Shown here in pieces: positions 3,264-50,929 of a stretch of 64,000 nt of DNA. The notes beneath the pieces were generated by a model, which was not told the DNA's origin, did not search any database, and saw only the letters and a list, made by a program, of their open reading frames with translations. The translations under genes were made by a program, and so were the position numbers. The first letter of the stretch is position 1. Each line of letters opens with the position of its first letter. The stretch covers positions 124,001-188,000 of IMG/VR virus record IMGVR_UViG_3300020473_001965; one strand, 5' to 3'.

Positions 3264-4300
3264 TCACCTCCGTGCAAAATGTGGGGTGTACCTTCGTATG
3301 ATCCGGCTGCAGTCTGAATGCCCCACTTCGCAACAACGGGTATTTCGCTCAAATTATGTGCATTCATATAAGACATGCTACTTTGGATTCCTGACTTCAA
3401 ATCCTTGATGATCGTCTGAGCGCTGGGCTTTACAGGCACTGAAGTTCTTACGCCCTCACCTACTGGCATATCTGCTCTGTCCCTATTTTTTCTGTCTATC
3501 ATGGCAGATGTAGAAGCCATGCCTCGAAATATCTTTACAGGCCCTGTTGGAGTTTGAACTACCGATCCTGGTGTTTCCGGAGCGCCAGAAAAAACACTCC
3601 CTAGCATGACATAATCTGCGCCGGCGGCTAATGCTTTTGCAATATCGCCTGAAGATCTTAAGCCTCCATCTGCGATGATTTTTACGCCCAATGAGTCAGC
3701 TACATCACAGCATTTAATCAAGCATGAGAACATCGGGACACCGTGTCCTGTGATCACCCTTGTTGAGCAACAAGATCCTCCACCGATACCTACTTTAATG
3801 CAATCGGCGCCCCAGTCTGCTAAATCTTTAACTGCCTCTGGTGTGGCTACGTTTCCTGCTACTATGTAGATGTCACTACCGTATGTGTTTCTCATTACCT
3901 TGAGTGTGTGACGCATCATGGTGCTATGCCCGTGTGCTATGTCGACTATAAAGTTTCTAGCGCCTGACTCATAAAGTGCTCGTGTTCTTTCAAAATCAGA
4001 CTCGCTGGCACCTACAGAAACAAAACAATCTTTTTCAGCAGCTCGGACTTGAAGATAATCGTCTACCGCACCTTGGATTGAATTAAATCGATGAAGGGCA
4101 CCTACTCCACCCGCGCTAGCAATAGCAACAGCCATCTCGGGCCCTGTAACAGTGTCCATATTTGCAGATAGAATAGGAACGCCCAAATCGATTGTTCCAA
4201 TAGTAGATGACGTGTCGAGTGATGATCTTGACGTACAGTCAGTCATTTGTGGTATCAGAAACACATCATTAAAAGTATAATAGGTCTCACCAGTCGGCAT
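3260..4300 (-). CDS. IMP dehydrogenase/GMP reductase family TIM barrel (no CBS domains; GMP-reductase-like)
   Basis: TFNDVFLIP, SANMDTVT, VDIAHGH, GNVAT, KVGIGGGSCCSTR (catalytic Cys), IADGG, FRGMAS, GEG. The ATG at 4300 overlaps the upstream TGA. Confidence 0.9.
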   Translation of the reverse strand: MPTGETYYTFNDVFLIPQMTDCTSRSSLDTSSTIGTIDLGVPILSANMDTVTGPEMAVAIASAGGVGALHRFNSIQGAVDDYLQVRAAEKDCFVSVGASESDFERTRALYESGARNFIVDIAHGHSTMMRHTLKVMRNTYGSDIYIVAGNVATPEAVKDLADWGADCIKVGIGGGSCCSTRVITGHGVPMFSCLIKCCDVADSLGVKIIADGGLRSSGDIAKALAAGADYVMLGSVFSGAPETPGSVVQTPTGPVKIFRGMASTSAMIDRKNRDRADMPVGEGVRTSVPVKPSAQTIIKDLKSGIQSSMSYMNAHNLSEIPVVAKWGIQTAAGSYEGTPHILHGGE

Positions 4301-5307
4301 CAATCTAGCTCCCACCAATCAATAGTCCTCTCAAGACCTTCCCAAAATCTTACAGTGGGCTCGTAACCGAGATCATTTTTAATCTCAGAAATGTCTGCTT
4401 GAGTGTGCATTACGTCCCCTGGCCTCCAGGGAGCATCTTGAACTACTACATGAGAAAATCGATTCTTGAAATACTCTAAGATTTCTTTGTTTGTAGTCCT
4501 GTCTCCGCAAGCAACGTTGTAACACTTACCCATAAACTTCATTGAAGCGTTTGCAGCTAAAACATTTGCATCTACAACGTTGTCAACATAACACATGTCT
4601 CTAGACTGTGTTCCGTCGCCGTCAGACCTCAGGGGTTTCATAAACTTAGTATTGTTACACCAGGCTGATACTGCAGTCGAATACGGCGAGTCTCCATACT
4701 GCCCCGGACCAAACACATTAAAGTATCGTAAACAAACAATATCTAGATTGTAGAGATCTCCAAATAATTTTGCCACATCTTCGATGGCACTCTTTTGCCA
4801 AGCGTAAGGTGATTTTGGATCTTTTGACTCCGCCTCTGTTGTAGGAAGAGTATCAGCGCCTCCGTACACTGAAGACGATGATGCCCAAACAACTCTGTCA
4901 ACAGCATTTCTAGAAGCTTCAAATAGAGCAACTGTCTTTGTTATATTGACGTCAGTAGTTTCAGTCGGATGCTCAACAGAATATGACACTCTAGGAACAG
5001 CGGCTTGATGAAATACTACATCGTACTCTCCTGATGCTACTAGCGATAATACTCTTTGATTAGCAAAATCATCTTGAATGACGAGAACCGTTCTGTCTGT
5101 AAAGGAACTGCTGTCTTTGGCTGCTAGCAAAAAAGAATCATAAAGCCCTGCATCTGGTACAGTTCTAAAGTCTAGGCCATCTAAAAGCTCAAGATGACCG
5201 TTTGACATATCGTCCACTATGGTAACAGACCATCCTTCTTTTACAAGCCTCTTGGCTAAGTTGCTCCCGATGAAACCGCAACCTCCCGTAACTAAAGCTT
5301 TTTTCAT
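4300..5307 (-). CDS. NAD-dependent NDP-sugar epimerase/dehydratase (extended SDR, WbpP/GalE-like)
   Basis: TGGCGFIG, HQAA, ASSSSVYG, SPYAWQK (YxxxK), LRYFNVFGP, RDMCYV, RPGDVMHT. Confidence 0.92.
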   Translation of the reverse strand: MKKALVTGGCGFIGSNLAKRLVKEGWSVTIVDDMSNGHLELLDGLDFRTVPDAGLYDSFLLAAKDSSSFTDRTVLVIQDDFANQRVLSLVASGEYDVVFHQAAVPRVSYSVEHPTETTDVNITKTVALFEASRNAVDRVVWASSSSVYGGADTLPTTEAESKDPKSPYAWQKSAIEDVAKLFGDLYNLDIVCLRYFNVFGPGQYGDSPYSTAVSAWCNNTKFMKPLRSDGDGTQSRDMCYVDNVVDANVLAANASMKFMGKCYNVACGDRTTNKEILEYFKNRFSHVVVQDAPWRPGDVMHTQADISEIKNDLGYEPTVRFWEGLERTIDWWELD

Positions 5308-5326
5308 TGTTATCTCCTCTCCTATT

Positions 5327-6238
5327 CTACACCAAAATATGGGCAGAGTTTAAGTTAAAGCGCATTCTAACATCAACTTCTTTAGGAATTAAATTTAATT
5401 CTTTATAGACAGCATTTGTCAAAAAGTACAAAAAATTTAGATCGTATCTAAAAGTCTTTGCAACCTCAGACGACCTTAATACAAAATGCATGTCAAGCGT
5501 TGAGTCCCTATAAGAGGCATGAATTAGAGAAATACATGTATCATCTGTATATATAAACCGCCTTGATGTTACATGCTCTACTCTATTATACTCATTTTCT
5601 CCGCGTAACTCTCTTCTAATCTTTGTAATCATTGAAGAATAAATTTTCTTATAATAATCTTTTTCGTGCTCATAATCCATGACAGAAGGATCTACATCCT
5701 CAAAGGTCCCATCATCATAAAGTGTCATAGACAAGGGTGTAGCTTCATGACTAGGAGAGTTAGCAGCAAAAGTCTTGACAAAGTCTGCAATTAAATCTAA
5801 GTTGCCGTTTTCGATTGCTTCTATCTCGTTCTTTACGAGGCTTACATTGTAATCTAACTCTGATCCTCTTAAAACAGTGACATTAGGAAAGTGACAAAGC
5901 CTGTTAGCATGATTTTCAAAATCCTTATAGAGACCCTTGATATCTTCAAGAGATTGTATCTCATCTCCACGCATACTGTATCTTAAAATCACATCTTGAA
6001 AGTCTGGAAGCAGAATTACAAATCTATTGTTTAAGTTTAAGATTTCTCGAGACATACCATACTCATGATGTTTTGTGTCTCTCTCATATTGCGCAGCGTG
6101 AACAAGCATGGAAAGATATGACCTGTCTTGTATGTTCCACTTGTAGCTGGAATCCTTATGAAGCGAATTATAGAAAGTTGTTTTTCCTGAAAGGTCTGGG
6201 CCTTCGAGAATTATATAGTTTGTCGGAAATCTTGTCAT
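5327..6238 (-). CDS. Fusion of a dNMP (thymidylate)-kinase-like P-loop domain and a minimal thymidylate-synthase/dCMP-hydroxymethylase-fold domain
   Basis: N-terminus: ILEGPDLSGKTT and QDRSYLS (TMK motifs). C-terminus: SRRF..C..(LDMHFVL)RSSE......YD...SAH, which aligns with TS R126/R127, C146, R166/S167, position 177 and H207. Confidence 0.75.
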   Translation of the reverse strand: MTRFPTNYIILEGPDLSGKTTFYNSLHKDSSYKWNIQDRSYLSMLVHAAQYERDTKHHEYGMSREILNLNNRFVILLPDFQDVILRYSMRGDEIQSLEDIKGLYKDFENHANRLCHFPNVTVLRGSELDYNVSLVKNEIEAIENGNLDLIADFVKTFAANSPSHEATPLSMTLYDDGTFEDVDPSVMDYEHEKDYYKKIYSSMITKIRRELRGENEYNRVEHVTSRRFIYTDDTCISLIHASYRDSTLDMHFVLRSSEVAKTFRYDLNFLYFLTNAVYKELNLIPKEVDVRMRFNLNSAHILV

Positions 6239-9200
6239 GATACCACCGGTTTCATCTTGGCCCCTGATGTCGATGCTCCCCAGTCAGGATCATTGGTTAC
6301 ATCAGCCAGCCATATTGTAAAAGGTTCTGCTTCTTGGGGTAGGAATCCCCAGACTCTTAACCAAGAAAGATTATTTTGATCATCACAAACACGAAGCCTG
6401 AAAAATGTCTTGCCCTTCTTGGTCTTCTTTTTTATTATTTCCTGGATACAAAACCAGACTACAGTTCGCGTGCTCCCCTCAAGAGAGGTCAATCTAGGAA
6501 TGTCTGCTTTTTCGATCTTGTCAAGTATGTTACCCGGATAGAGAAGATCTCTTGGAACTGTTGACGTCAAGTCGTAATGCATTGCGAGTTTTTCTGAACG
6601 TGTCCAATCGTCGACATACTCAGTCTTTGAAATCAGTTCTGGCAATATTGGCGGCGCGCTAGACTTCATTGCTTTTCGAAGCGTCATTCCATACATGCTT
6701 TTCCGTAAAATCTCGTAGTTTTCAATGATTATCTCATAAAGCTGCCTGTGATTATTGATTCTGCCGGTGGCAAAATCTTCCAAAGATGAAAAAGCATTAA
6801 TCTTGCAAAGAGAAGAGAAACACGTCTTGTTCATTTTGGAATGCTTCCATTTACCTTCGTCGTCATACAATAGATTGTGCAAGCTCGTGTACGGTCTTGT
6901 TGCCATTATTTCTTGAACAGCGTTAATACCCACACCCTTGACAGACGTCAAAGGCGGCACGAAAGCATTGCGATCATCAGAGTATGCCCACTCGTCGCCA
7001 GAATAGTTGATATCAGCAGGAGCAAACTTATAACCCATTTGTTTGATCTCTGCAATAGTTTTTTCTAGACCCTTTGGATTGTTATTTTCTGACTGAAGGA
7101 TTGTTGCCAACCAAGACTTTTCATGGTATGTATGCAACCAAGCAGCGTAGTAAGAATCAATAGCATAAGCTACAGCGTGCGACTTATTGAAACCGTAAAC
7201 ACTGAAGAACTCAATCCTATCAAAGAGTTTGTGCATTTTATCTTCGGGCAAACCGTGTAGTTGATTAGCTCCTTCGACAAACTTTTTACGTAGTGCATCT
7301 CGTTCCGCGCCTTTCTTACCAATCGTGTCAAGTGACTTCTTAACAAGAGTCTTGCGCATCTTATCAGATTCACCCGGAGAAAAACCTGCCAACTTTTGTG
7401 CAAGAAGCATAAACTGCTCTTGGAATGTAATGTGGCCGAATGTTGTACCAAGAATCTCTTCAATAATCGGGTGATCATACTCAATCTTGCTAGCATTTTT
7501 CTTGTCCCGAACGTACTTTTTATGAACATTTGCCCGCAGTGGTCCAGGGCGGTAAATCGCTGTCAGAGCAGCCAGCTCTTCAATTGATGTAGGCTTTGCT
7601 GCTTCGCAGAACTTTCTAGCACCCTCAGCAGTAAATTGAAAGACGCCAGTCTTTCTTCGCTGATGATAAACATGCTTCCATACCTTTTCATCGTCCTGTG
7701 TAACAAACCTACAATTTAAGTGCTTGTCAAAATAATCTCTAATATCGATAAAAGTCGGATCTTCATTGCCTTCACTCTTTAGGATCCGTCGAATGCAATT
7801 TTCAACGTCTTTCAAGAGTGTCAACCCCAAGAAGTCAAACTTGATAAAACCATTGTCTTCAAGATTTCGGAAGTTCATCCCTTCAGTCCAGGGTGTTTGC
7901 AACTCACCGCGAACTGAGACTAGAGGCATTGTCTTTTCAAGGTCTTCGGCAGGTGCTATAATCACGCCGCCGGCGTGGCGACCGATTGAACGATTTTGCA
8001 TAAAGAGTGCTTCAATATGATCTTTTACCTTAGGGTAGTTGTTCATGAAATCCCGATAGCGCTTAGAATACTTCATACAATCTTCATGCTGGAGAACAAA
8101 AACAGACTTCTCGGTGTTTTCGTCGCGAGCCTGTGCCATTACCTCATCTTGAAGTGGCCCGGTCATCTTATTGACCTCTCCGAAATCAACACCGTAAAAC
8201 TTTGAAATGTCCTTAACGAGAGATTTAAGCTTCAAAGTATTGAAATTGGAAACAGGGATTACTGCTTCGTCACCGTATAGTTCACGGGCTGCATCAATAA
8301 GGGCATCTCTGTCGCCTGCATCGGAATCAATATCTGGCCAAGATGTTCTATGTCTTCCAAGGAATCGGTCCCAAAGTAGGCCATACGGAATAGGATCAAG
8401 CTGGGTTATCCCTAGCAAGTAATTTACAAGACTGCCGCCGCCAGAGCCACGGGCTGGGCCAAAGAGAGTTCTATCTTCTGCTTTGTGGAAAACCTGATAC
8501 ATCGTCAAGAAATAGTTTTCAAAACCTAGATACTTGATATCTGACATTTCTGTTTTAGTACGCTCGACGTATTCAGGCTTTAAGTGAAGCCCTGTGTCTA
8601 CGAGCCCTTGTTTTACAAGATCTAGTAGCTGATCAAAGGCAGACTTTTCAGGAGTGTTAAAGTTTGGAAGCTTAACTGACTGGTCGATCCAGACGTCTTC
8701 ACACATTTCCCATGCAATATCATGTGTACGTTCGATGGCATCTGAAATTGTTTGGTCGTGCCCTTTATAAAAATCGTACTTGTCGCGGTGCAATGTATAC
8801 TCATCCCACATCTGCTCAGCATTCTTCGGATAAAGCTCACATTTTAGGTTGTCAAACTCGGGCAGCGGTGAGGGGTTATCTCTCATCCACCCTAAACGCT
8901 TATACAACTCTCGTGCCTCCCACTTATTCGGATTATAATAATGAGAATCGGCTGTGGCCACCAGTGGGACACCTGTCGAATCATGCAGGCTTAGAAGGTG
9001 TTTGTTAACTGTGTGTTGCGCGTCCAGTTTATTGAATTGCAGCTCAAGAAAGAAGTTTTCATTACCTACACATTGAGTAAATCTATCCGTCAGGTTTTGA
9101 AGTTCCATCTGGATTTCAGCTTCTGATTTCTTTAGAGCTGTTCCGCGGAGAATGCGATTAGAATAAATCCCGCCTAAACATGCTGTGCTTACAACAAGGC

Positions 9201-9765
9201 CTTCGCCATGCTCTTGAAGCATATTAAAATCGATTCGTGGGAATCGATAGAATCCATGTTTATAAGCCTTCTTGATCAATGTAAAAAGATTACCAAGGCC
9301 CACTTGGTTTTTAGCGATAACAACCAAGTGATATCTACGCTTCCACTCATCTTTGAGGACATCAATTGTCTTTGTTTCGTCCTCGTCTTCAATGGTGTGC
9401 CCGGTAGCTTTGACATCATCATCAGCGTCGATGTCTGTCACCTCTAAAGCCTTTGCCTCAGACTTGGCGTCTCGGACGGCTTGCCGGTGAGCCTCGTAAT
9501 CGTTCCTCCAGTCAGTCAAAGAAGGTACGAAATAAAACTCACAGCCATAAAGCTGTCGATAATTGCGTCCAGCCTTTTGCAATTTTTCTGTATGTTTCCG
9601 AGCGTGCGCCAATCCTGATCCGTTACCGTGATCAGTTAGGGCCCAGGCATCCATGCCGTTCTCCAAAACAAAATCGATATGATCAGCGGGATAACCCAAG
9701 CCGTCAAAGACCGAAAAACCTGTGTGTGCGTGTAATCCTACAAACCGCTTTGGCTTGATTATCAT
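6235..9765 (-). CDS. dnaE: DNA polymerase III alpha subunit (family C) with PHP domain
   Basis: LHAHTGFS..DG, LTDHG, TADSHY (PHP); GPARGSGGGS, PDIDSD, GRHAGG, KFDFLGL, GVFQF, YRPGP, YGFNKSHA. Confidence 0.95.
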   Translation of the reverse strand: MIIKPKRFVGLHAHTGFSVFDGLGYPADHIDFVLENGMDAWALTDHGNGSGLAHARKHTEKLQKAGRNYRQLYGCEFYFVPSLTDWRNDYEAHRQAVRDAKSEAKALEVTDIDADDDVKATGHTIEDEDETKTIDVLKDEWKRRYHLVVIAKNQVGLGNLFTLIKKAYKHGFYRFPRIDFNMLQEHGEGLVVSTACLGGIYSNRILRGTALKKSEAEIQMELQNLTDRFTQCVGNENFFLELQFNKLDAQHTVNKHLLSLHDSTGVPLVATADSHYYNPNKWEARELYKRLGWMRDNPSPLPEFDNLKCELYPKNAEQMWDEYTLHRDKYDFYKGHDQTISDAIERTHDIAWEMCEDVWIDQSVKLPNFNTPEKSAFDQLLDLVKQGLVDTGLHLKPEYVERTKTEMSDIKYLGFENYFLTMYQVFHKAEDRTLFGPARGSGGGSLVNYLLGITQLDPIPYGLLWDRFLGRHRTSWPDIDSDAGDRDALIDAARELYGDEAVIPVSNFNTLKLKSLVKDISKFYGVDFGEVNKMTGPLQDEVMAQARDENTEKSVFVLQHEDCMKYSKRYRDFMNNYPKVKDHIEALFMQNRSIGRHAGGVIIAPAEDLEKTMPLVSVRGELQTPWTEGMNFRNLEDNGFIKFDFLGLTLLKDVENCIRRILKSEGNEDPTFIDIRDYFDKHLNCRFVTQDDEKVWKHVYHQRRKTGVFQFTAEGARKFCEAAKPTSIEELAALTAIYRPGPLRANVHKKYVRDKKNASKIEYDHPIIEEILGTTFGHITFQEQFMLLAQKLAGFSPGESDKMRKTLVKKSLDTIGKKGAERDALRKKFVEGANQLHGLPEDKMHKLFDRIEFFSVYGFNKSHAVAYAIDSYYAAWLHTYHEKSWLATILQSENNNPKGLEKTIAEIKQMGYKFAPADINYSGDEWAYSDDRNAFVPPLTSVKGVGINAVQEIMATRPYTSLHNLLYDDEGKWKHSKMNKTCFSSLCKINAFSSLEDFATGRINNHRQLYEIIIENYEILRKSMYGMTLRKAMKSSAPPILPELISKTEYVDDWTRSEKLAMHYDLTSTVPRDLLYPGNILDKIEKADIPRLTSLEGSTRTVVWFCIQEIIKKKTKKGKTFFRLRVCDDQNNLSWLRVWGFLPQEAEPFTIWLADVTNDPDWGASTSGAKMKPVVS

Positions 9766-9788
9766 TGAAACTCCATGTTAGTGATAAC

Positions 9789-9817
9789 ATTATATACTGC
9801 GGTTTTGGGTTTTACAA
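9789..9817 (-). promoter_or_regulatory. sigma70-like promoter for the dnaE operon
   Basis: Minus strand TTGTAA-N17-TATAAT in the intergenic gap. Confidence 0.75.
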
Positions 9818-9838
9818 CTATCTCAACTGATAATTTTG

Positions 9839-10618: not shown

Positions 10619-10620
10619 TG

Positions 10621-10929: not shown

Positions 10930-10932
10930 GTT

Positions 10933-11214: not shown

Positions 11215-11218
11215 TCAC

Positions 11219-12601: not shown

Positions 12602-12636
12602 AACTGCACCCTCACATAGCAATAAATATCACGCTA

Positions 12637-13611
12637 CTAGTAATAATCTGTCAGGTCAACACCCTTTTCTTTTGCGTCATTAAGGTGAATCAGGGGGTCA
12701 TAAGTGCCTGAATCGGACGTGATTGTTCGCAAACTTGAAGCGATCCCAGACTCCAAAGTAATGTAAGGTCGCCACCCTGAGGCTTCTCTAAACTTTGCAC
12801 TAGACAGAATATGATTGCCCAGATAATCCGTTTCAGGGTGCCACTTGATTATGCTGGAAACATCTTTCCCCACTATGCTTGAAAGCATCTCAACAATGCC
12901 CCCGGTGTTATAAGGCGTTTCAGCAGCTACATTATAATCAGCTCCAAACATACCCTTGACACAACTCATGAAGACTGCATTACAAAAATCAGAGACATGC
13001 ATGTAGTCCTTAGTCTTGTTAGGATTTAAAAACATGTCAAGCGAATTAACGTCATTAAGAGCTGAGTATATTGTCTTTGCTATCAAAGAGTTCATGTCGC
13101 CGGCGCCGCCGTATGCAAAAAGAGGTCGCATAATCACCCAGTCTCGAGCTGTGCTTCTTACGATCTGTTCTCCGGCTAGCTTCTGAACGCCATAAAAAGT
13201 TCTAGGGTTTAGGTCTGAATCCTCGAAGATTGGTCTGTCTTGATACTTTTCTGTATCATAGATTACTGTGGTACCCATATAACAAACTGGGACGTTTGCT
13301 TTTCTTGCCGCCCTTGCAATATTATGTGTCCCCATCACGTTACTAAGAGAAGAATCCTCAGCATTCAGTGCGACGACATCTGTTCCAACAACAGCGGCGT
13401 TATGAACGATTACATCGATACCTCTATTTGAAAGAACACTCGACCATACATCTTCAGTGTTTCCCCACACACAAGGTTCGTTTGTCTTGTGTCGTCTAAC
13501 AGCCAGATCCTCATCATCCATTAGTGAAACAAATTCATGATCAGTCGTTTGTATCAATCTCCCTAGATTGTCTCCGATGAATCCGCGTTCGCCTGTAATT
13601 GCAATTTTCAT
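12637..13611 (-). CDS. NAD-dependent NDP-sugar epimerase/dehydratase/reductase (second extended SDR)
   Basis: ITGERGFIG, HNAA, NVMGT, YGVQK, KDYMHV.D. The ATG at 13611 overlaps the upstream TGA. Confidence 0.85.
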   Translation of the reverse strand: MKIAITGERGFIGDNLGRLIQTTDHEFVSLMDDEDLAVRRHKTNEPCVWGNTEDVWSSVLSNRGIDVIVHNAAVVGTDVVALNAEDSSLSNVMGTHNIARAARKANVPVCYMGTTVIYDTEKYQDRPIFEDSDLNPRTFYGVQKLAGEQIVRSTARDWVIMRPLFAYGGAGDMNSLIAKTIYSALNDVNSLDMFLNPNKTKDYMHVSDFCNAVFMSCVKGMFGADYNVAAETPYNTGGIVEMLSSIVGKDVSSIIKWHPETDYLGNHILSSAKFREASGWRPYITLESGIASSLRTITSDSGTYDPLIHLNDAKEKGVDLTDYY

Positions 13612-13871
13612 ATACTTGAAATCCTCTCTATGATTGCCAAAGACCACGTATTAGAATTTGGGCTTGGCACATAATCGTATAGCACATGAGGTGCTACTTC
13701 ATCATACGTGTCTAGCTCAAAATTTTCTATTAGATAGACGATTCCTTTTGTGGCCTTGCTGGCTTTTTTGTTTGAGTAATCTTTTTCACATGCCTCTTTG
13801 GCAAGATCTAGATGTGAATACACACCTATTGATTCATTCTTTTCTAAGATAACTCTGCTGACTAAAAACAT
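13608..13871 (-). CDS. Hypothetical protein
   Basis: ORF with AGGG RBS, translationally coupled to the downstream SDR; IGVYS..LA motif common in small phage proteins. Confidence 0.55.
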   Translation of the reverse strand: MFLVSRVILEKNESIGVYSHLDLAKEACEKDYSNKKASKATKGIVYLIENFELDTYDEVAPHVLYDYVPSPNSNTWSLAIIERISSI

Positions 13872-13913
13872 TTGTGTTCCCTTGTTTAAAGATACTCAGC
13901 AATTCTATTTTTT

Positions 13914-14477
13914 TTAAGTTAATCTAAATTCTTTTAAAATATTTTTAATGTACGAAAATAGCAAGCCTTCATTTACAAGATGCGACACAACTTTAACATT
14001 ATCGCTTTTTAGTTGTTCAATCGCAACAATGTTATTTGGACTATCTTCCCAGAGATATACTACGTCGGCATTTAGTTTCTCAACATATTCAAGAGCCTTG
14101 ACATACTTGGCTCGAGGATCGGAACTTCCTACTGCTTCGATTTTTGGCATAGGATTGACGCCATAATCAGAAAGAAACTTTGCAACAGGAGCTGGATTCG
14201 CCCTTGCAGTCAATACTATAACTCTTTCCGACCCATGCTGTTTTAAAGCACTTTCCATTTTTGACCATACAGACTTAATAATAGAAGCGTCAGGTGGATA
14301 GACATCAAACTCAGCAAAGTCAAGAACATCACCTGGCTGACTTAGAGATCGTTCATAATCTCTATACTGTCTAGAGGTTACGTACTCTGTCTCACCTGAC
14401 TTTCTATTAATGATCACTTTAGCGCCTGAGTCTACTAAGGTGTCATCAAAATCAAATATGTAAAATGGGCTTTCCAT
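13914..14477 (-). CDS. HAD-superfamily phosphatase
   Basis: IFDFDDTL (motif I), VLTAR (II), K (III), WEDSPNN (IV). Confidence 0.8.
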   Translation of the reverse strand: MESPFYIFDFDDTLVDSGAKVIINRKSGETEYVTSRQYRDYERSLSQPGDVLDFAEFDVYPPDASIIKSVWSKMESALKQHGSERVIVLTARANPAPVAKFLSDYGVNPMPKIEAVGSSDPRAKYVKALEYVEKLNADVVYLWEDSPNNIVAIEQLKSDNVKVVSHLVNEGLLFSYIKNILKEFRLT

Positions 14478-14522
14478 GAAATAACTACTTACCAAAAGAT
14501 AAGTATGTATTTGATTGATTAT

Positions 14523-14972
14523 TTACTCGATCTCTTGATCATAAGGTTCTTCAATCAAATAACCAGTCGAATGAACTCTGTCCAAATAATCTTCAAGTTG
14601 CTCAAAAGTTGTACATACCTTTATACCGCTTCTTGCTAGCATCAAGTTAAACTTTGCCCCTTCTGGGAGGCCTTGACAAAAGTACACGATCGGAACATTC
14701 TTAGCGTAGGCATAGCCGGCTTCCCATATGGTTCCGATATCCTTGTCTCTAGTATTGACAATCAAGAAATCTGATGTTTCGATATGATACAAGTTCCCTG
14801 CGAAGGTTTCATCCTGGGTCTCTTTTGGTGCATTCGGAGGGCAAACAAAAATCTTTCTTGGGCTTGCAAGGTCGATCCACTTTCGACTCTCACAAATCTC
14901 TTCAAGCCTTGTTAGCTCTTCTGCTTGAGTAGGATTGAACCACCCAGATGCCAAATAAATCTTCTTTTCCAT
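14523..14972 (-). CDS. Nucleoside 2-deoxyribosyltransferase / nucleotide N-hydrolase (NDT, DNPH1/Rcl, MilB family)
   Basis: KIYLASGWF, D.GTIWEAGYAYA (catalytic Glu), FNLML. Confidence 0.85.
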   Translation of the reverse strand: MEKKIYLASGWFNPTQAEELTRLEEICESRKWIDLASPRKIFVCPPNAPKETQDETFAGNLYHIETSDFLIVNTRDKDIGTIWEAGYAYAKNVPIVYFCQGLPEGAKFNLMLARSGIKVCTTFEQLEDYLDRVHSTGYLIEEPYDQEIE

Positions 14973-14974
14973 TT

Positions 14975-15958
14975 TTACTTCTCCATCTTTTTTTGATAAT
15001 CAGACTCAAGATCTGAAATTTGCTCTAGTAAATTGTTCCACTGTTGTCTAAACTTCGTGTTTCCGTCTGCTTCTTCAGTAGGCGGGTTAGTACCATTAAG
15101 ATCATAACGATAAGCTTGGTAAATTGTATCATTCGGATGATATTCAATATGCTGGTCGCTGTCATCATCAGGCCAGTAAAGATTAGTCCCCGTTCCTGCC
15201 CTTACATTTTTAATATAGTGCCATGCCGGACTGGTAAGCGCTTTTGTACCAATGACAGTACTAGCCTCAGGCAAGACCTTGATTATAGCCAGTGCCATCT
15301 TTGCAGCAATAAGATTATCAATTGCAGGTTGAATCTGCTTGTCTGATCTTTGCTTAACAAATCCGATAATATCTTTGAGATTGAACCTGCCATAGTAAAA
15401 TGTGGAGAGGCACTTTGGAAGAATAGTTCTCGCATCCATCATAGAAATTTGACGAGTGTCAACCATATCTGCGTAAAGTTTCTTTGAGTCCTCAACATGT
15501 CGCTTCCATCTGCGATAAAGCTCTGGACTGTTCTCAACAGAGCTTGGTACAAGACAGGGCTCATGGTGAAGAAATCTATCACCTGTACACTGGGCTGCAA
15601 AAGATCCTGCACGATGGCGGATGAGATGCGTTACGGTCTGTAGGTCGATTCCGCTGAACTTGAAGGTGAAGCTAAAAATCTCCATTGGCGTTGGAAGCGC
15701 TCTAAAATTTAGAACGTCCTCGAGATTTTCGCTTAGCTCATAAGTTGATGCAGATGATGGATCAGTGTACTCTGGCGTATCCGCCCAAGTTGCTTTAACA
15801 TAGCGCCAAGCAACTTCTCTCATTTGTTCAGCAGTTGGGTGATCGACAAGTTCAACTTCTAGACCTTCAAGGTCGTTAAGAAAATCAGTCGTTGGCTCTT
15901 CGTCAAATCGAAGAGTCATAGGTAGTTCTACAGGTGTTAGATCGTTATTTTGAGGCAA
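14975..15958 (-). CDS. Divergent ThyX-fold (flavin-dependent thymidylate synthase-like) protein
   Basis: TPME.FSFTF, HLIRHRAGSF, DARTILP, RFNLK...FVKQR. The canonical RHRx7S Ser is Cys here. Confidence 0.8.
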   Translation of the reverse strand: MPQNNDLTPVELPMTLRFDEEPTTDFLNDLEGLEVELVDHPTAEQMREVAWRYVKATWADTPEYTDPSSASTYELSENLEDVLNFRALPTPMEIFSFTFKFSGIDLQTVTHLIRHRAGSFAAQCTGDRFLHHEPCLVPSSVENSPELYRRWKRHVEDSKKLYADMVDTRQISMMDARTILPKCLSTFYYGRFNLKDIIGFVKQRSDKQIQPAIDNLIAAKMALAIIKVLPEASTVIGTKALTSPAWHYIKNVRAGTGTNLYWPDDDSDQHIEYHPNDTIYQAYRYDLNGTNPPTEEADGNTKFRQQWNNLLEQISDLESDYQKKMEK

Positions 15959-15978
15959 TTTTTTTCTCCTTAGATAGT

Positions 15979-16007
15979 ATAATACGGCCTGCTTTGTCTT
16001 TGTACAA
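15979..16007 (-). promoter_or_regulatory. sigma70-like promoter for thyX-like and NDT genes
   Basis: TTGTAC-N17-TATTAT followed by an AAGGAG RBS. Confidence 0.7.
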
Positions 16008-16008
16008 G

Positions 16009-16413
16009 CTAATATCCAGTATTGATTCTGTCATGAATGATCCCATCTTTTTCTTTGTAAGCACTGTAAAGATCATTTGAATCAAACCCTACAAGAATCA
16101 ATAACGAAAAGAAGTAGTTAAAAGCATCTACTACCTCTTCGAGAAAAGCACTTCTATCAAAATCAGTTACTTGAGTTGATCTGTGCGGTTTCCAGTTCTT
16201 TAAATGTTGGAGTGCTTCAAACATCTCTTCGACACCTCTTAGTGCGATATCGCGAACATATTGTTGATCTTCTCTCGTCTTTAGATCAAGAGGCCAAACA
16301 GGAGATATTTCCGGATTTTTTGATTGTAATGCTTTCATAAATGCCTCTCTCATTTGAAACATTTCTAAAAGTTTGTCATCACCACTGGTCGACATCAGCT
16401 TGTTCCTCATCAT
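16009..16413 (-). CDS. All-alpha NTP pyrophosphatase (dimeric dUTPase / T4 gp56 dCTPase / MazG-like)
   Basis: EEMFEA...KNWKPH...EEVVDAFNY...Y..K...I..R..GY. Confidence 0.8.
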   Translation of the reverse strand: MMRNKLMSTSGDDKLLEMFQMREAFMKALQSKNPEISPVWPLDLKTREDQQYVRDIALRGVEEMFEALQHLKNWKPHRSTQVTDFDRSAFLEEVVDAFNYFFSLLILVGFDSNDLYSAYKEKDGIIHDRINTGY

Positions 16414-16765
16414 TAGTCACCTCGGATTCAGAATCTTCTTCTGTGTCGTCTTGAAGAGCACTAATTATTTCATCATTTATATTAGTCATCATTTTTCTAG
16501 CATTTTCAATATCTTTTTCTGTCATTTCTTCGCCATCTGCTAGAGCTTCCTCTTTAGCTCTCTGCAACTGAATCTCTGTCATCATCTCGTTCAAAGACTT
16601 GTCAAAAATCTCTAAGCATACTGGGTGGAGTGTCAAGACTCCATCATCAGACTTCAGTCGCATCATCCTTAAGTTGTCAACTACGTCTGTTCCTGTCAAG
16701 AGTGCTACTTGCAATACCTTTGCAACATGTCCTATTACATCATCTGACATTTTCAATTGTTCCAT
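16379..16765 (-). CDS. Hypothetical protein with acidic C-terminus
   Basis: AGGAG RBS before the ATG at 16765; LQVALLTGTDVVDNLR core. Confidence 0.6.
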   Translation of the reverse strand: MEQLKMSDDVIGHVAKVLQVALLTGTDVVDNLRMMRLKSDDGVLTLHPVCLEIFDKSLNEMMTEIQLQRAKEEALADGEEMTEKDIENARKMMTNINDEIISALQDDTEEDSESEVTNDEEQADVDQW

Positions 16766-16773
16766 TTTTTCTC

Positions 16774-17577
16774 CTATGATTGTCTTTTTGGTGACCAAAA
16801 TGTTGATCTTCCGTCTTTAGTTTTTTCTTTCACAACTTCGTTGCCATCTAGATCAACTTTTCTATTATATACTAAAAACTTTGATCCGTATTCCCCTAAA
16901 TTTCCATCAAATTGCTTATATGATTTAAGCGTCGCACCGCCAGATTGAAAACTTGTGACCATTACTTCTCTAACAGCATCGTTGAGCTTCACCAACTCCC
17001 GGTCTGAGATTTCTTCAACCTTTCTATGAGGTGAAATCTCTGCTAGCCAAAGTGCATCAGACTTTATATAATTTCCAACACCAGCGACAACAGACTGGTC
17101 CATTAAAGCTTGTACGACTAGCTTGGCATCTTGTGTCCTCATCTGTTGAACAAATAAGTGGTCCGGACATTTTTCGCTTAATAGATCTGGCCCTAATGAC
17201 TTTAACTTTTCAATCAATGGCTGGGGACCTTTTACAAACTTCATTGTTCCAAAATTTCTAATATCATTGTAGTATATCATTTCATCATCAACTACAAACT
17301 TAAATCTTGTATGCTTGTTAGGGTGGATTGACCACTCGCCTGTCATTCCTAGTGTTGACCAAATTGACCAGGTCCCTTCTAAGAGCCAGTACATAAACTT
17401 ACCGTGAACTCCTGTCCCAAGAACATGTAGCGGTAATTCTTCTTCAAATATATCAGCACCATCCGGAGATTTCTTTGTGTACCTCCCAGAGACAACTGAT
17501 ACTGAATTCAAAGTTTTTCCCGTCACTGCCCTTGAAAGATCTAATGCATATCTTCTTACTTCTGGTCCTTCTGGCAT
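16774..17577 (-). CDS. Fpg/Nei family DNA glycosylase/AP lyase (Nei-type, zincless finger)
   Basis: N-terminal MPEGPEV, HGK, LGMTG, D.RNFG, LGPD, LMDQ..VAGVGNYI (H2TH), C-terminal GRSTFW without Cys ligands. Confidence 0.92.
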   Translation of the reverse strand: MPEGPEVRRYALDLSRAVTGKTLNSVSVVSGRYTKKSPDGADIFEEELPLHVLGTGVHGKFMYWLLEGTWSIWSTLGMTGEWSIHPNKHTRFKFVVDDEMIYYNDIRNFGTMKFVKGPQPLIEKLKSLGPDLLSEKCPDHLFVQQMRTQDAKLVVQALMDQSVVAGVGNYIKSDALWLAEISPHRKVEEISDRELVKLNDAVREVMVTSFQSGGATLKSYKQFDGNLGEYGSKFLVYNRKVDLDGNEVVKEKTKDGRSTFWSPKRQS

Positions 17578-17603
17578 TTTTGAACTTTATCTCCTACTTG
17601 TGT

Positions 17604-17632
17604 ATTATATAGAATGTAGGGCTTTTGTTCAA
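17604..17632 (-). promoter_or_regulatory. sigma70-like promoter for the nei-like operon
   Basis: TTGAAC-N17-TATAAT followed by an AGGAG RBS. Confidence 0.75.
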
Positions 17633-18304
17633 ATGAATCGAATCATTATATCTGACACACATATCGGTACTAAATTTTATAGATCAAAAGCACTTCTCAA
17701 ATTCTTGCAAGAAAATCTCCATAAGTACGATGAACTAATCTTAGCAGGAGATATTATTGATTTTATTAAAATCCCTGTGTTTACAGAGCGCTGTCTTGAA
17801 ATATTGGAAAAAGCTCAGTCAGCAAAAAGAATTGTTTACGTCGTTGGAAATCATGATGAATCTCTAGTCGGTGTTATCGGAAAAAAAGTAATGGGGGTTG
17901 AGTTTGTCAAGAGATATGAGTTCGAAGAAGATGGTAGAAAGTTTAGAGTAGAGCATGGTGATGCTTATGACAAAGGCGTTCTTCATAACCGAATCTTTGT
18001 CAAGTTTCTTTCCGTCATTCAAAACATGCTTGAGTTTACATTTAACTTTGACTTCACATCTTGGTGGACAGCAATTCAGATTAAAAAGCACAAGCTAAGA
18101 TCGATTATTCATATCCTTAGGCACAATCCGAAAATCGATGTCTTTATTATGGGTCACACACACATACCCGAAGCTTTAATCTGGGTTGATGAAGATCAGA
18201 ATATAAAAACCTACATTAACTCAGGCGACTGGGTCACTCACCAGACCTATGTTACCATTGAAGAGGGGGTTGCGAGACTTAGGAAGTTCGAAGATCAGGA
18301 GTAG
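17633..18304 (+). CDS. Calcineurin-like metallophosphoesterase (LpxH / UDP-2,3-diacylglucosamine hydrolase-like)
   Basis: ISDTHIG, GDIID, GNHD, EHGD, MGHTH, NSGDW. The real start is probably the ATG at 17633. Confidence 0.85.
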   Translation: MNRIIISDTHIGTKFYRSKALLKFLQENLHKYDELILAGDIIDFIKIPVFTERCLEILEKAQSAKRIVYVVGNHDESLVGVIGKKVMGVEFVKRYEFEEDGRKFRVEHGDAYDKGVLHNRIFVKFLSVIQNMLEFTFNFDFTSWWTAIQIKKHKLRSIIHILRHNPKIDVFIMGHTHIPEALIWVDEDQNIKTYINSGDWVTHQTYVTIEEGVARLRKFEDQE

Positions 18305-18720
18305 TTATTCTTCAAAAAGTTGTGGTAATTTACTAGAGCCCCGTCTTTTGGTTCGACTTTTTTCCATTCTCCTAGACAAAAAATACGATATGCATCTGAG
18401 CCGTACTTTCCGATCCCATAGAGTACATCTGGTTGATCTTTCCAGTCTTTTTGCAGGTAATCCTTAGACATATCGACAAGGGCTTTAGAACGTCTCTGAG
18501 ACAACCCTAAGGGTTTTATCAGCGCTTCTATTTCAACTGGATTAGCACTTGCCATGGCTGATGGGTCTGGCCAGCGGCGCAAACACTCCCAAAAATAAGG
18601 TTCAGCTTGGACTCGCTTTGTTAGGTTGCAAAATATACAGACAACAAAGATCTTCCAGGGGTCTTCCCAAAGCTGTTCTTGAATTAGGTTGTAGGGTGAT
18701 TTAGGGGGTTCCCATCGCAT
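18295..18720 (-). CDS. MBD4-like HhH-GPD mismatch DNA glycosylase (catalytic domain only)
   Basis: WEPPKSPYNLIQEQLWEDPWK, LIKPLGL...R, LYGIGKYGSDAYRIFC..EWKKVEPKD..L..Y: a near-colinear match to the vertebrate MBD4 glycosylase domain as I recall it. Confidence 0.88.
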   Translation of the reverse strand: MRWEPPKSPYNLIQEQLWEDPWKIFVVCIFCNLTKRVQAEPYFWECLRRWPDPSAMASANPVEIEALIKPLGLSQRRSKALVDMSKDYLQKDWKDQPDVLYGIGKYGSDAYRIFCLGEWKKVEPKDGALVNYHNFLKNNYS

Positions 18721-50900: not shown

Positions 50901-50929
50901 AAAATAACACGCATAAAGAAAATGTTCAA
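50901..50929 (-). promoter_or_regulatory. sigma70-like promoter, possibly leaderless, for the polA-like gene
   Basis: TTGAAC-N17-TATTTT, 5 nt before the GTG start. Confidence 0.55.

What the first reader, a model, noticed from the sequence alone, without database searches (positions are those of the whole stretch)
4300..18720. Candidate undescribed pyrimidine (probably cytosine) hypermodification system built on two folate-less thymidylate-synthase folds plus NDP-sugar enzymes
Seen in the sequence, clustered around the replicative dnaE: a dNMP-kinase/TS-fold fusion (5327-6238), a ThyX-fold protein with an altered active site (14975-15958), an NDT/DNPH1-family N-hydrolase, a dCTPase/dUTPase-type pyrophosphatase, two NDP-sugar SDRs (one directly downstream of the kinase-TS gene in the dnaE operon), a GT8, and MBD4- and Nei-like glycosylases. 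Established: T4-type pre-replicative base replacement uses this logic, namely a TS-fold modifier, a kinase for the modified dNMP, a pyrophosphatase that destroys the canonical dNTP, and a sugar transfer step. Inference: this phage makes a C5-modified, perhaps glycosylated, dCMP (or dUMP) by non-folate chemistry and replicates it with its own DnaE. From memory (not verified here), kinase-TS fusions also occur in arabinosyl-hydroxycytosine loci of RB69-like phages. I see no U32 peptidase or arabinose-5-P isomerase in this window, so the ThyX-like and SDR partners would imply different chemistry.
Basis: partly seen in the sequence, partly recalled or inferred. Interest (0 to 1): 0.9.

Follow-up and report, generated by a model that had tools for sequence, protein, structure and literature searches.

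The report
Marine phage cytosine-modification gene cluster
An uncultured 236-kb marine phage carries, next to its DNA polymerase, a fused kinase plus cut-down thymidylate-synthase-like enzyme that probably makes a C5-modified (most likely 5-hydroxy) cytosine nucleotide for its DNA; that chemistry was described in 2025-26, but this fused form is missed by standard annotation.

Summary
The key gene (5327-6238) folds confidently (pLDDT 94.6) into a YorR/thymidylate-kinase-like kinase fused to a truncated thymidylate-synthase (TS) fold. Its best structural match is the flavin/O2-dependent dCMP 5-hydroxylase AfhB of phage HY126 (9iqu). The catalytic Cys, the phosphate-binding arginines and the cytosine-specifying Asp (E. 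coli N177D) are invariant in 193 homologues. The published D169N signature of 5-hydroxy-dCMP synthases is not met here: the window has Glu, and the family splits N 112 / E 42 / D 39.

Characterised 5-hydroxycytosine clusters (RB69, DLP3, RL38J1) keep the same kinase type as a separate neighbouring gene, so this protein reads as a fusion of that pair. A gp56-type dCTPase/dUTPase, a dCMP deaminase and a thymidine kinase complete a T4-like precursor scheme.

The ThyX-like protein (Ser88→Cys, His53→Leu) sits in a separate conserved module (unknown ORF, dCTPase, ThyX-like, NDT). It is most simply the phage's dTMP synthase; nothing shows it to be folate-independent. One sugar epimerase is conserved beside the fusion gene, but GT8 is rare among relatives, so glycosylation is only inferred.

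Verdict: a real feature and a new variant of a known kind. No member of the fusion family has been tested experimentally.

The parts
5327..6238 (-). Fusion protein 'KinTS' (303 aa). The N-terminal half is a YorR/thymidylate-kinase-like nucleotide kinase (P-loop EGPDLSGKTT, D38-R39, R90-G91-D92). The C-terminal half, from about residue 160 to 303, is a truncated TS fold with R226/R227, C235, R255-S256-S257-E258, D266 and S298-A299-H300. Predicted function: convert dCMP to a C5-modified dCMP (most likely 5-hydroxy-dCMP), then phosphorylate it.
6235..9765 (-). DnaE-type (Pol III alpha) DNA polymerase. It is translationally coupled to the fusion gene and lies next to it in all related loci (DnaE detected in all 80; called as one intact ORF in 76).
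16009..16413 (-). All-alpha NTP pyrophosphatase related to T4/RB69 gp56 dCTPase/dUTPase. Predicted to remove dCTP and dUTP and so supply dCMP and dUMP.
16379..16798 (-). 139-aa protein of unknown function, tightly linked to the pyrophosphatase and the ThyX-like gene (73 of 80 ThyX-like loci).
14975..15958 (-). Divergent ThyX-family flavoprotein (327 aa). It keeps RHR, R128, R177 and R204. Ser88 is Cys124, His53 is Leu88 and His59 is Ile94. It has a conserved ~90-aa C-terminal extension. Most simply the phage's dUMP-to-dTMP synthase; a different C5 chemistry is not excluded.
14523..14972 (-). Nucleoside 2-deoxyribosyltransferase / DNPH1-family protein directly downstream of the ThyX-like gene (75 of 80 loci). 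Role unresolved: salvage, or hydrolysis of an unwanted dNMP.
4300..5307 (-). Extended SDR closest to WbgU/WbpP/TviC-type UDP-N-acetylhexosamine (or uronate) 4-epimerases. It lies 19 nt downstream of the fusion gene and is conserved there in 55-64 of 80 loci.
12637..13647 (-). Second extended SDR, dTDP-glucose 4,6-dehydratase / 4-keto-reductase-like. Found in 39 of 80 fusion-gene loci and 46 of 80 ThyX-like loci.
9839..10618 (-). GT8 retaining glycosyltransferase with an intact DxD motif, in a variable island between DnaE and SDR2 (2 of 80 related loci). It is the only candidate DNA glycosyltransferase in the window.
822..1226 (-). dCMP deaminase (analogue of T4 cd), conserved in 66 of 80 loci.
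2252..2905 (-). Thymidine kinase, conserved in 68 of 80 loci.
16774..17577 (-). Fpg/Nei-family DNA glycosylase with an intact Pro2/Glu3 N-terminus. Found in 49 of 80 ThyX-like loci. Possibly guards the genome against deaminated or oxidised pyrimidines (inference).
18295..18720 (-). Short HhH-GPD glycosylase-like protein (weak Pfam hit). Found in 38 of 80 ThyX-like loci.
13914..14495 (-). HAD-type phosphatase-like protein (PHROG polynucleotide kinase/phosphatase). Rare among relatives (3-8 loci).
11219..12622 (-). Tandem duplicate of an unknown HExxH domain. Not a glycosyltransferase and probably not part of the pathway.

Best explanation
The region is the nucleotide-precursor island of an uncultured marine jumbo phage, and it works on the T4 pattern. 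Which steps are shown and which are inferred is marked below.

1. A gp56-type pyrophosphatase (16009-16413) turns dCTP and dUTP into dCMP and dUMP.
2. The C-terminal mini-TS domain of the fusion protein (5327-6238) binds dCMP. Asp266 reads the cytosine and Cys235 attacks C6, so that a substituent is installed at C5. This is most likely a hydroxyl from O2 via a flavin, as in AfhB and RB69 gp48.
3. The fused YorR-like kinase converts the modified dCMP to the diphosphate. Host NDP kinase makes the triphosphate, and the adjacent DnaE polymerase incorporates it.
4. In parallel, the dCMP deaminase, the ThyX-family enzyme and thymidine kinase supply dTTP.
5. The UDP-sugar epimerase next to the fusion gene and, in this phage, GT8 may then glycosylate the C5 hydroxyl on DNA.

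Shown here: the folds, the conserved catalytic residues, the homologies and the synteny.
Inferred: the substrate, the nature of the C5 group, the cofactor, incorporation into DNA and glycosylation.
For: Fold and closest structures
- AF2 model pLDDT 94.6.
- Top PDB match is 9iqu, the HY126 dCMP hydroxylase AfhB (E 1.7e-7). Next is 9iqc, a flavin monooxygenase with dCMP. Both rank ahead of T4 dCMP hydroxymethylase and ThyA (about 4e-5).
- The BFVD search returns phage dCMP-type TS homologues and thymidylate kinases.

Active-site residues
- Invariant in 193 homologues: R226, R227, C235, R255, S256, D266 and H300.
- The spacing C-20-RSx[N/E/D]-7-D is identical to that in RB69 gp48 and E. coli ThyA.
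- hhalign against four 5-hydroxy-dCMP-synthase-type sequences gives E 1.4e-4 over 125 columns. Against a dCMP hydroxymethylase it gives E 1.5e-3.
- The protein ends 3 residues after the shared S-A-H motif. This resembles gp48 (about 12 residues after it) more than the hydroxymethylase (about 30).

Kinase half
- Best PDB sequence hit is SPbeta YorR (E 3.9e-7).
- It shares the unusual GPD-x-x-GK P-loop with RB69 gp45 and Marfa gp041, the kinases of the hydroxycytosine clusters (probability 93%).
- Lee et al. list a YorR/thymidylate-kinase-like kinase beside the synthase in DLP3, RB69 and RL38J1 (PMC13326640).

Pathway context
- gp56-type dCTPase, dCMP deaminase and thymidine kinase.
- The fusion gene is adjacent to DnaE in all 80 related loci, and the epimerase is conserved downstream.
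- The family is virus-restricted: one full-length hit in 185,579 prokaryote genomes.
Against: - The D169N signature proposed as diagnostic for 5-hydroxy-dCMP synthases is not met in the window protein (Glu258). The family is N 112 / E 42 / D 39.
- Sequence similarity to verified synthases is marginal (E about 1e-4; probability 53%). It is only slightly better than to a hydroxymethylase.
- The TS domain lacks roughly the first 80 residues and the C-terminal tail of ThyA-type enzymes, so the cofactor site cannot be read.
- No flavin reductase has been identified.
- No glycosyltransferase is conserved near the gene; GT8 is in 2 of 80 loci.
- There is no cultured relative: the fusion protein has no tblastn match in 50,697 phage records and the DnaE is at most about 31% identical to any of them. 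So there are no chemical data on the DNA.
Confidence: 0.5

Rival explanations
1. This is a truly new hypermodification pathway in which both the mini-TS domain and the ThyX-like protein modify pyrimidines by non-folate chemistry. For example, the Cys-bearing ThyX-like flavoprotein could hydroxylate or otherwise derivatise dUMP or dCMP, or the mini-TS could use a pterin with O2. The SDRs would supply an unusual sugar.
For: - The ThyX-like family has an invariant QCTGDR motif with Cys at the Ser88 position. It has lost His53 and His59 and carries a conserved 90-aa extension with many invariant residues.
- It scores below the thyX equivalog cut-off.
- It is tightly linked to the dCTPase and the NDT-like gene.
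- The 169-equivalent position of the fusion protein is Glu here, not the Asn of known hydroxylases.
- An SOD-like gene and a pterin-4a-carbinolamine dehydratase are conserved nearby in relatives.
Against: - The ThyX-like protein keeps every nucleotide- and FAD-binding arginine, and its best structural matches are ThyX and PolB, which are C5 methylases.
- A Cys at the Ser88 position exists as an engineered T. maritima ThyX variant (3g4c), which is the best profile hit. From memory, that variant keeps activity.
- The phage has a dCMP deaminase that makes dUMP, and no other dTMP synthase was seen in the island.
- GR1 carries the ThyX-like gene as its only annotated TS, without the fusion gene.
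Confidence: 0.2
2. This is an ordinary nucleotide-supply island and the DNA is canonical. The fusion protein would be a thymidylate or dNMP kinase whose TS-like half only binds a nucleotide (regulation or channelling). ThyX makes dTMP. The SDRs and GT8 would be auxiliary genes acting on host surface polysaccharide.
For: - dCMP deaminase, thymidine kinase, ThyX-family enzyme, dUTPase-type enzyme, RNR and a kinase form a complete canonical dTTP route.
- Sugar-nucleotide genes are common auxiliary genes in marine phages (general knowledge).
- GT8 is not conserved.
- The TS half is heavily truncated.
Against: - The nucleophilic Cys, both phosphate arginine pairs, Ser256, Asp266 and His300 are invariant across 193 sequences at 35-100% identity. 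This argues for catalysis on a cytosine nucleotide rather than mere binding.
- Asp at the N177 position specifies dCMP, not dUMP or dTMP (PMC13326640).
- The closest structures are dCMP-modifying enzymes.
Confidence: 0.17
3. The mini-TS domain is a folate-dependent dCMP hydroxymethylase or methylase (T4 gp42 or XP12 type), so the DNA carries 5-hydroxymethyl- or 5-methylcytosine, possibly glycosylated.
For: - T4 dCMP hydroxymethylase is among the top structural hits.
- 81 of 193 homologues, including the window protein, keep an acidic residue at the 169-equivalent position, as folate-using enzymes do.
- The residue three positions before the Cys is acidic (Asp232), as in hydroxymethylases.
Against: - The domain lacks the N-terminal segment and the C-terminal tail that build and close the folate site in ThyA and in the hydroxymethylase. 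The protein ends 3 residues after His300.
- The best structural and profile matches are the hydroxylases.
- There is no Pfam Thymidylat_synt hit at all.
Confidence: 0.13

Closest known systems
5-hydroxycytosine (arabinosyl/hexosyl-5hoC) systems of RB69, DLP3, HY126 (AfhB, PDB 9iqu) and Rhizobium phage RL38J1 (PMC13326640)
   Same: - A TS-fold enzyme with catalytic Cys and N177D acts on dCMP before replication.
- A YorR/thymidylate-kinase-like kinase belongs to the same cluster.
- A gp56-type dCTPase is present.
- Sugar-nucleotide genes and glycosyltransferase(s) lie nearby.
- The protein has no long tail after the S-A-H motif.
   Different: - Here the kinase and TS halves are one polypeptide.
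- The TS half is cut to about 140 residues and is invisible to Pfam.
- Position 169 is Glu in the window (N/E/D across the family) instead of the diagnostic Asn.
- There is no U32 peptidase-like gene, arabinose-5-P isomerase or sugar-1-P nucleotidyltransferase.
- The polymerase is DnaE, not family B.
- The candidate glycosyltransferase is GT8 (GT-A fold), not a GT-B enzyme.
- No member has been tested.
T4 hydroxymethylcytosine pathway (gp56 dCTPase, gp42 dCMP hydroxymethylase, gp1 dNMP kinase, cd, td, alpha/beta-glucosyltransferases)
   Same: The overall logic is the same: destroy dCTP, modify dCMP on a TS fold, phosphorylate the product, deaminate dCMP for dTMP synthesis, then possibly glycosylate on DNA.
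   Different: - The modifier lacks the folate-site elements.
- The kinase is YorR-like, not gp1-like.
- dTMP synthesis would use a ThyX-family enzyme rather than a ThyA-family enzyme.
Flavin-dependent thymidylate synthase ThyX and the UMP/dUMP methylase PolB (PDB 1o26, 4p5b)
   Same: The ThyX-like protein has the same fold (TM-score up to 0.76 on the target), the RHR motif and the dUMP-binding arginines.
   Different: - Ser88 is Cys; His53 is Leu; His59 is Ile.
- The loop after the Cys is two residues longer (CTGDR).
- It has a conserved ~35-aa N-terminal and ~90-aa C-terminal extension.
- It scores below the NCBIfam equivalog cut-off.
Bacillus prophage SPbeta YorR (PDB 2axp/3kb2), uncharacterised nucleotide-kinase-like protein
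   Same: Best sequence match of the kinase half. The EGPD P-loop, the DR motif and the RGDE motif are shared.
   Different: YorR is a stand-alone 173-aa protein with no TS domain.
Geobacillus phage GR1 (OK896991) nucleotide island
   Same: Full-length ThyX-like homologue at 46% identity, together with NDT-like genes, a dUTPase, DnaE and thymidine kinase.
   Different: It has no fusion gene. It carries an amidoligase, a gamma-glutamylcyclotransferase and a GT of another type. It is a soil thermophile siphovirus of 79 kb.

Membership tests
5-hydroxy-dCMP synthase (flavin/O2-dependent TS homologues: AfhB, RB69 gp48, DLP3 gp80) | Thymidylate-synthase fold | tested here: met
   The AF2 model (pLDDT 94.6) has 9iqu as top Foldseek hit at E 1.7e-7. 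The TS core aligns over about 113 columns at about 3.2 A. The fold is truncated at both ends.
5-hydroxy-dCMP synthase (flavin/O2-dependent TS homologues: AfhB, RB69 gp48, DLP3 gp80) | Catalytic cysteine (E. coli ThyA C146) | tested here: met
   C235 is invariant in 193 of 193 homologues. It lies 20 residues before the R-S motif, as in gp48 and ThyA.
5-hydroxy-dCMP synthase (flavin/O2-dependent TS homologues: AfhB, RB69 gp48, DLP3 gp80) | Asp at the N177 position (dCMP rather than dUMP) | tested here: met
   D266 is invariant in 193 of 193 homologues and lies 8 residues after position 258, as D194 does in gp48.
5-hydroxy-dCMP synthase (flavin/O2-dependent TS homologues: AfhB, RB69 gp48, DLP3 gp80) | Asn at the D169 position (signature proposed as diagnostic in PMC13326640) | tested here: not met
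   The window protein has Glu258. Across the family the residue is N 112, E 42 and D 39.
5-hydroxy-dCMP synthase (flavin/O2-dependent TS homologues: AfhB, RB69 gp48, DLP3 gp80) | Acidic residue at the L143 position | tested here: inconclusive
   The window has Asp232. The family is variable (D 85, S 48, N 31, Q 11, E 9), and the next residue is mostly Asp.
5-hydroxy-dCMP synthase (flavin/O2-dependent TS homologues: AfhB, RB69 gp48, DLP3 gp80) | Bound flavin; oxygen atom taken from O2; product 5-hydroxy-dCMP | not testable with these tools
   Needs purified protein, UV-visible spectra or HPLC, 18O2 labelling and LC-MS.
5-hydroxy-dCMP synthase (flavin/O2-dependent TS homologues: AfhB, RB69 gp48, DLP3 gp80) | Significant sequence relatedness to verified members | tested here: inconclusive
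   hhalign of the family profile against four synthase-type sequences gives E 1.4e-4 and probability 53%. tblastn against 50,697 phage records finds no match, and there is no Pfam TS hit.
T4-type pre-replicative cytosine replacement system | dCTP-destroying pyrophosphatase of the gp56 type | tested here: met
   hhalign of the family profile (60 sequences) against RB69 gp56 gives probability 93.9% and E 1.6e-7 over 123 columns to the C-terminal GY. Substrate not tested.
T4-type pre-replicative cytosine replacement system | Kinase able to phosphorylate the modified dNMP | tested here: inconclusive
   An intact kinase domain is fused to the modifier. It is of the same YorR-like type as the kinases in the hydroxycytosine clusters. 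Specificity untested.
T4-type pre-replicative cytosine replacement system | DNA glycosyltransferase acting on the modified base | tested here: inconclusive
   GT8 with an intact DxD motif is present in the window. It occurs in only 2 of 80 related loci, and no glycosyltransferase is conserved nearby.
T4-type pre-replicative cytosine replacement system | Non-canonical cytosine in virion DNA | not testable with these tools
   The lineage is uncultured and only sequence is available.
ThyX (flavin-dependent thymidylate synthase) | ThyX fold and RHR-x7-S motif | tested here: inconclusive
   The fold criterion is met (Foldseek TM-score up to 0.76; Pfam Thy1 at 64 bits). RHR is present, but the Ser is replaced by an invariant Cys124.
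ThyX (flavin-dependent thymidylate synthase) | Curated equivalog score (NCBIfam TIGR02170) | tested here: not met
   44.1 bits against a cut-off of 87.9.
ThyX (flavin-dependent thymidylate synthase) | dUMP-binding arginines (T. maritima R78, R80, R147, R174) | tested here: met
   R114, R116, R177 and R204 are invariant. R90 is probably R128, shifted by two residues.
ThyX (flavin-dependent thymidylate synthase) | His53, which stacks on the folate pterin | tested here: not met
   It aligns to the invariant Leu88, and His59 aligns to Ile/Val94. The role of His53 is taken from established knowledge of T. maritima ThyX.
ThyX (flavin-dependent thymidylate synthase) | dTMP synthesis / thyA complementation | not testable with these tools
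   Needs a genetic or enzymatic assay.

The most novel reading that the evidence does not exclude
The mini-TS/kinase fusion and the Cys-bearing ThyX-like flavoprotein could carry out pyrimidine C5 chemistry that has not been described. One possibility is a C5 group other than OH, CH3 or CH2OH. Others are a pterin-dependent rather than flavin-dependent hydroxylation, recycled by the neighbouring pterin-4a-carbinolamine dehydratase, or a ThyX-fold hydroxylase acting on dUMP. In that case a cosmopolitan lineage of marine jumbo phages would carry an unknown hypermodified base. The N/E/D switch at the 169-equivalent position would mark different products in different sub-lineages.
Probability: 0.2. 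Interest if true: 0.85.

Novelty: new variant of a known kind. Interest (0 to 1): 0.62.

Why it matters
- If the fusion protein makes a modified dCMP, a large and widespread group of uncultured marine jumbo phages would have non-canonical cytosine in their DNA. The group has at least 600 homologues in ocean metagenomes and contigs up to 284 kb, with DnaE as the polymerase.
- That would affect how these phages are recovered and quantified in viromes, since it can bias library preparation, amplification and nanopore base-calling. It would also affect how they evade restriction and CRISPR.
- The protein is missed by Pfam's TS model, so surveys that rely on it will not find this family.
- The fusion gives Rosetta-stone evidence that the YorR-like kinases in 5-hydroxycytosine clusters work with the synthase.
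- The cut-down TS domain and the natural N/E/D variation offer a minimal scaffold for working out how a TS fold changed cofactor.

Tried and rejected
- Megablast of the whole interval, and tblastn of the fusion protein, against 50,697 phage records gave no match. There is therefore no cultured relative with known DNA chemistry. The DnaE is at most about 31% identical to any cultured phage polymerase.
- phmmer and profile searches of the fusion protein against PDB sequences found only the kinase half (YorR). The TS half needed structure prediction.
- The 467-aa ORF was tested as a candidate glycosyltransferase and rejected. It is a tandem HExxH domain whose halves are fused elsewhere to exonuclease, NUDIX or PAP2 domains.
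- I looked for a conserved glycosyltransferase among all ORF families in 80 related loci. Only sporadic GT8 and GT1-type genes turned up.
- PHROG, Pfam and NCBIfam gave nothing for several conserved small neighbours (209, 150, 136 and 96 aa) or for the 139-aa ORF.
- The ThyX-like model was only moderately confident (pLDDT 76.8). Its conserved insertion at residues 248-291 is unmodelled, so the extension could not be interpreted.
- Whether the contig holds another thymidylate synthase outside the 64-kb window could not be checked.
- The prokaryote genome scan gave one mis-binned MAG hit and no host clue.
- I considered the ThyX-like protein as the flavin reductase for the hydroxylase. No evidence bears on this either way.

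Full report
**1. Observation**

The interval 4300-18720 is a tightly packed run of minus-strand genes.
- Extended SDR at 4300-5307.
- DnaE at 6235-9765.
- GT8 at 9839-10618.
- Second SDR at 12637-13647.
- HAD-like protein at 13914-14495.
- Nucleoside 2-deoxyribosyltransferase-family protein at 14523-14972.
- Thy1/ThyX-family protein at 14975-15958.
- dUTPase_2/MazG-like pyrophosphatase at 16009-16413.
- Fpg/Nei at 16774-17577.
- A weak HhH-GPD hit at 18295-18720.

The 303-aa protein at 5327-6238 has no Pfam hit. PHROGs split it into a thymidylate-kinase part and a thymidylate-synthase part. Just outside the interval lie a dCMP deaminase, a DHH phosphoesterase, a thymidine kinase and a GMP-reductase-like gene. 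Further on are RNR, DnaB, RecA, a gp32-like protein and T4-type baseplate genes.

The window is part of IMG/VR contig 3300020473_001965 (235,672 bp). It has no DNA match among 50,697 phage records. Its DnaE is at most about 31% identical to any cultured phage polymerase.

**2. The kinase/TS fusion**

The family is large: at least 600 homologues, nearly all about 303 aa, mostly from ocean metagenomes. It is virus-restricted, with one full-length hit in 185,579 prokaryote genomes, in a MAG.

An AlphaFold model built on 42 homologues is confident (pLDDT 94.6). Against the PDB, its best match is 9iqu, the dCMP hydroxylase AfhB of phage HY126 with dCMP (E 1.7e-7). Next is 9iqc, a flavin monooxygenase with dCMP and FAD. 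T4 dCMP hydroxymethylase and many ThyA structures follow. Against viral models it matches phage dCMP-type TS homologues and thymidylate kinases.

Across 193 non-identical homologues, these residues are invariant:
- kinase half: the P-loop, D38-R39 and R90-G91-D92;
- TS half: R226, R227, C235, R255, S256, D266 and H300.

The spacing Cys-20-Arg-Ser-x-X-7-Asp equals that of E. coli ThyA (C146, R166, S167, D169, N177) and of RB69 gp48 (C163, R183, S184, N186, D194). C235 is therefore the nucleophile and D266 is the N177D change that selects dCMP.

**3. Relation to published work**

Lee et al. (NAR 2026, PMC13326640) showed that TS homologues of RB69, DLP3, RL38J1 and several metaviromic sequences make 5-hydroxy-dCMP from dCMP with O2 and a loosely bound flavin. 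The hydroxyl is then glycosylated on DNA. They propose D169N as a diagnostic residue.

The window protein has Glu at that position. The family has Asn in 112, Glu in 42 and Asp in 39 sequences. So the signature is not met here, although it is met in most of the family.

Profile comparison with four synthase-type sequences gives E 1.4e-4 over 125 columns. Comparison with a dCMP hydroxymethylase gives E 1.5e-3 over 69 columns. Like gp48, and unlike the hydroxymethylase, the protein ends almost immediately after a shared Ser-Ala-His motif.

Table 1 of the paper lists a YorR/thymidylate-kinase-like 'nucleotide kinase' inside each characterised cluster: DLP3_078, RB69p045 and RL38J1_214. The kinase half of the window protein has YorR as its best PDB sequence match (E 3.9e-7). 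It also shares the unusual GPD-containing P-loop with RB69 gp45 and Marfa gp041 (probability about 93%). The window protein therefore reads as a fusion of a gene pair that stays separate in the known systems.

**4. The rest of the scheme**

The profile of the MazG-like family aligns end to end with the RB69 gp56 dCTPase/dUTPase (probability 93.9%, E 1.6e-7). With the dCMP deaminase and thymidine kinase, this reproduces the T4 precursor logic.

In 80 related IMG/VR loci, the fusion gene always follows DnaE. The other genes occur within 10 kb as follows:

| Gene | Loci of 80 |
|---|---|
| dCMP deaminase | 66 |
| Thymidine kinase | 68 |
| Epimerase-type SDR | 55-64 |
| NDT-like gene | 51 |
| Second SDR | 39 |
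| ThyX-like gene | 38 |

GT8 is present in only 2 loci and the 467-aa ORF in 4.

SDR1 is closest to the WbgU/WbpP/TviC UDP-N-acetylhexosamine 4-epimerases. SDR2 is closest to dTDP-glucose 4,6-dehydratases and reductases. A scan of 40 variable neighbour families found only sporadic GT1-type and GT8 genes. Glycosylation is thus plausible for this phage, which has an intact GT8, but is not supported by conservation.

**5. The ThyX-like protein**

It has the ThyX fold; the top Foldseek hits are PolB and ThyX, with TM-score up to 0.76 on the target. It keeps RHR and the dUMP-binding arginines. It has an invariant Cys where ThyX has Ser88. The best PDB profile hit is in fact the T. maritima S88C mutant 3g4c. 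It has Leu and Ile/Val where ThyX has His53 and His59, and it carries conserved N- and C-terminal extensions. It scores below the NCBIfam thyX cut-off.

Centred on this gene, 80 loci show a tight module: 139-aa ORF, dCTPase, ThyX-like, NDT (73-76 of 80). Fpg/Nei follows in 49 and HhH-GPD in 38. At least 45 of the 80 fusion-gene contigs also hold the ThyX-like gene.

Geobacillus phage GR1 has a homologue at 46% identity as its only annotated TS, and it lacks the fusion gene. The ThyX-like module is therefore separable from the cytosine modifier. Because the phage makes dUMP with its deaminase, and no other dTMP synthase appears in the island, the simplest role is dTMP synthesis. The altered site keeps another chemistry open. 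Calling it 'folate-less' is unsupported.

**6. Mechanism proposed**

1. dCTP and dUTP are hydrolysed to the monophosphates.
2. dCMP is modified at C5 on the mini-TS domain, most likely by hydroxylation.
3. The fused kinase phosphorylates the product.
4. DnaE incorporates the triphosphate.
5. The C5 group may then be glycosylated.

dTTP comes from the deaminase, the ThyX-family enzyme and thymidine kinase. The two glycosylases may remove deamination products of the modified cytosine; this is inference from the known substrates of the Nei and MBD4 families. All chemical steps are inferred, and none was testable here.

**7. Verdict**

The chemistry most likely belongs to a kind described in 2025-26. 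The fused, truncated, Pfam-invisible enzyme, its N/E/D polymorphism and its presence throughout an uncultured DnaE-bearing marine jumbo-phage lineage are new. That lineage is probably of the PGC_A type described in PMC9123017. I rate it a new variant of a known kind, interest about 0.6.

Noticed in passing
window 11219-12622 (-): The 467-aa protein is a tandem duplicate of an unknown domain carrying HExxH motifs (HEMHH and HEIQH). In other marine proteins each half is fused to DEDD exonuclease, NUDIX, PAP2 or other domains. It has no family annotation.
   Followed up: partly
L002:18599-19282 (+), beyond the window's left end; also L048:14053-14754: A gene with an Fe/Mn superoxide-dismutase C-terminal domain is conserved about 5 kb downstream of the fusion gene in 57 of 80 loci. 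Two unknown conserved genes (209 and 96 aa) lie with it.
   Followed up: partly
L034:19852-20247 and 26 other related loci: A pterin-4a-carbinolamine dehydratase homologue lies about 9.6 kb from the fusion gene. This enzyme recycles the pterin cofactor of hydroxylases, which is intriguing next to a TS-derived putative hydroxylase.
   Followed up: no
L046:5950-7056 (+): A relative carries a short (368-aa) adenylosuccinate-synthetase homologue (Pfam E 1e-71) beside DnaE. It is of PurA/PurZ size, which hints that some members may also alter their purines.
   Followed up: no
window 5327-6238, residue 258 of the protein: The position equivalent to ThyA D169 is trimorphic across the family (Asn 112, Glu 42, Asp 39) and tracks sub-lineages. 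The Asp type has the ThyX-like gene within 10 kb in 20 of 23 loci. The Glu type has two SDR copies in 14 of 15.
   Followed up: partly
window 3260-4318 (-) and 2838-3263 (-): A GMP-reductase/IMPDH-family gene (about 15 of 80 loci) and a small cupin that matches a 'cysteine dioxygenase' PHROG (about 22 loci) sit between the epimerase and thymidine kinase. Their roles are unknown.
   Followed up: no
L008:1430-3304, L021:3142-4200: Some relatives encode Hsp70 (DnaK) and a full DnaJ next to DnaE.
   Followed up: no
L016:1520-3106, L048:8923-9996, L007:4720-5709: In several relatives DnaE is split into pieces, with endonuclease-like ORFs (DUF559) between or beside them. This suggests homing elements or inteins in the polymerase gene.
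   Followed up: no
window 49687-50895 (-): A 402-aa family-A DNA-polymerase-like ORF is present in addition to DnaE.
   Followed up: no
window 26587-35313, 35314-39243, 50926-54378, 54674-57823, 58099-62730 (-): Very large ORFs (2908, 1309, 1150, 1049 and 1543 aa) fill much of the window. They were not annotated here.
   Followed up: no
L001 (Geobacillus phage GR1, OK896991: 23.9-41.3 kb): GR1 combines the ThyX-like gene with two NDT-like genes, an HD-domain protein, a 460-aa glycosyltransferase, a nitroreductase/dihydropteridine-reductase-like gene directly upstream, an amidoligase and a gamma-glutamylcyclotransferase. That gene set is reminiscent of thymidine hypermodification clusters.
   Followed up: partly
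window 17477-18304 (+): The only plus-strand gene in the region is a calcineurin-like metallophosphoesterase. Its longest ORF overlaps the start of the Fpg/Nei gene by about 100 nt. It is conserved in 10-21 related loci.
   Followed up: no
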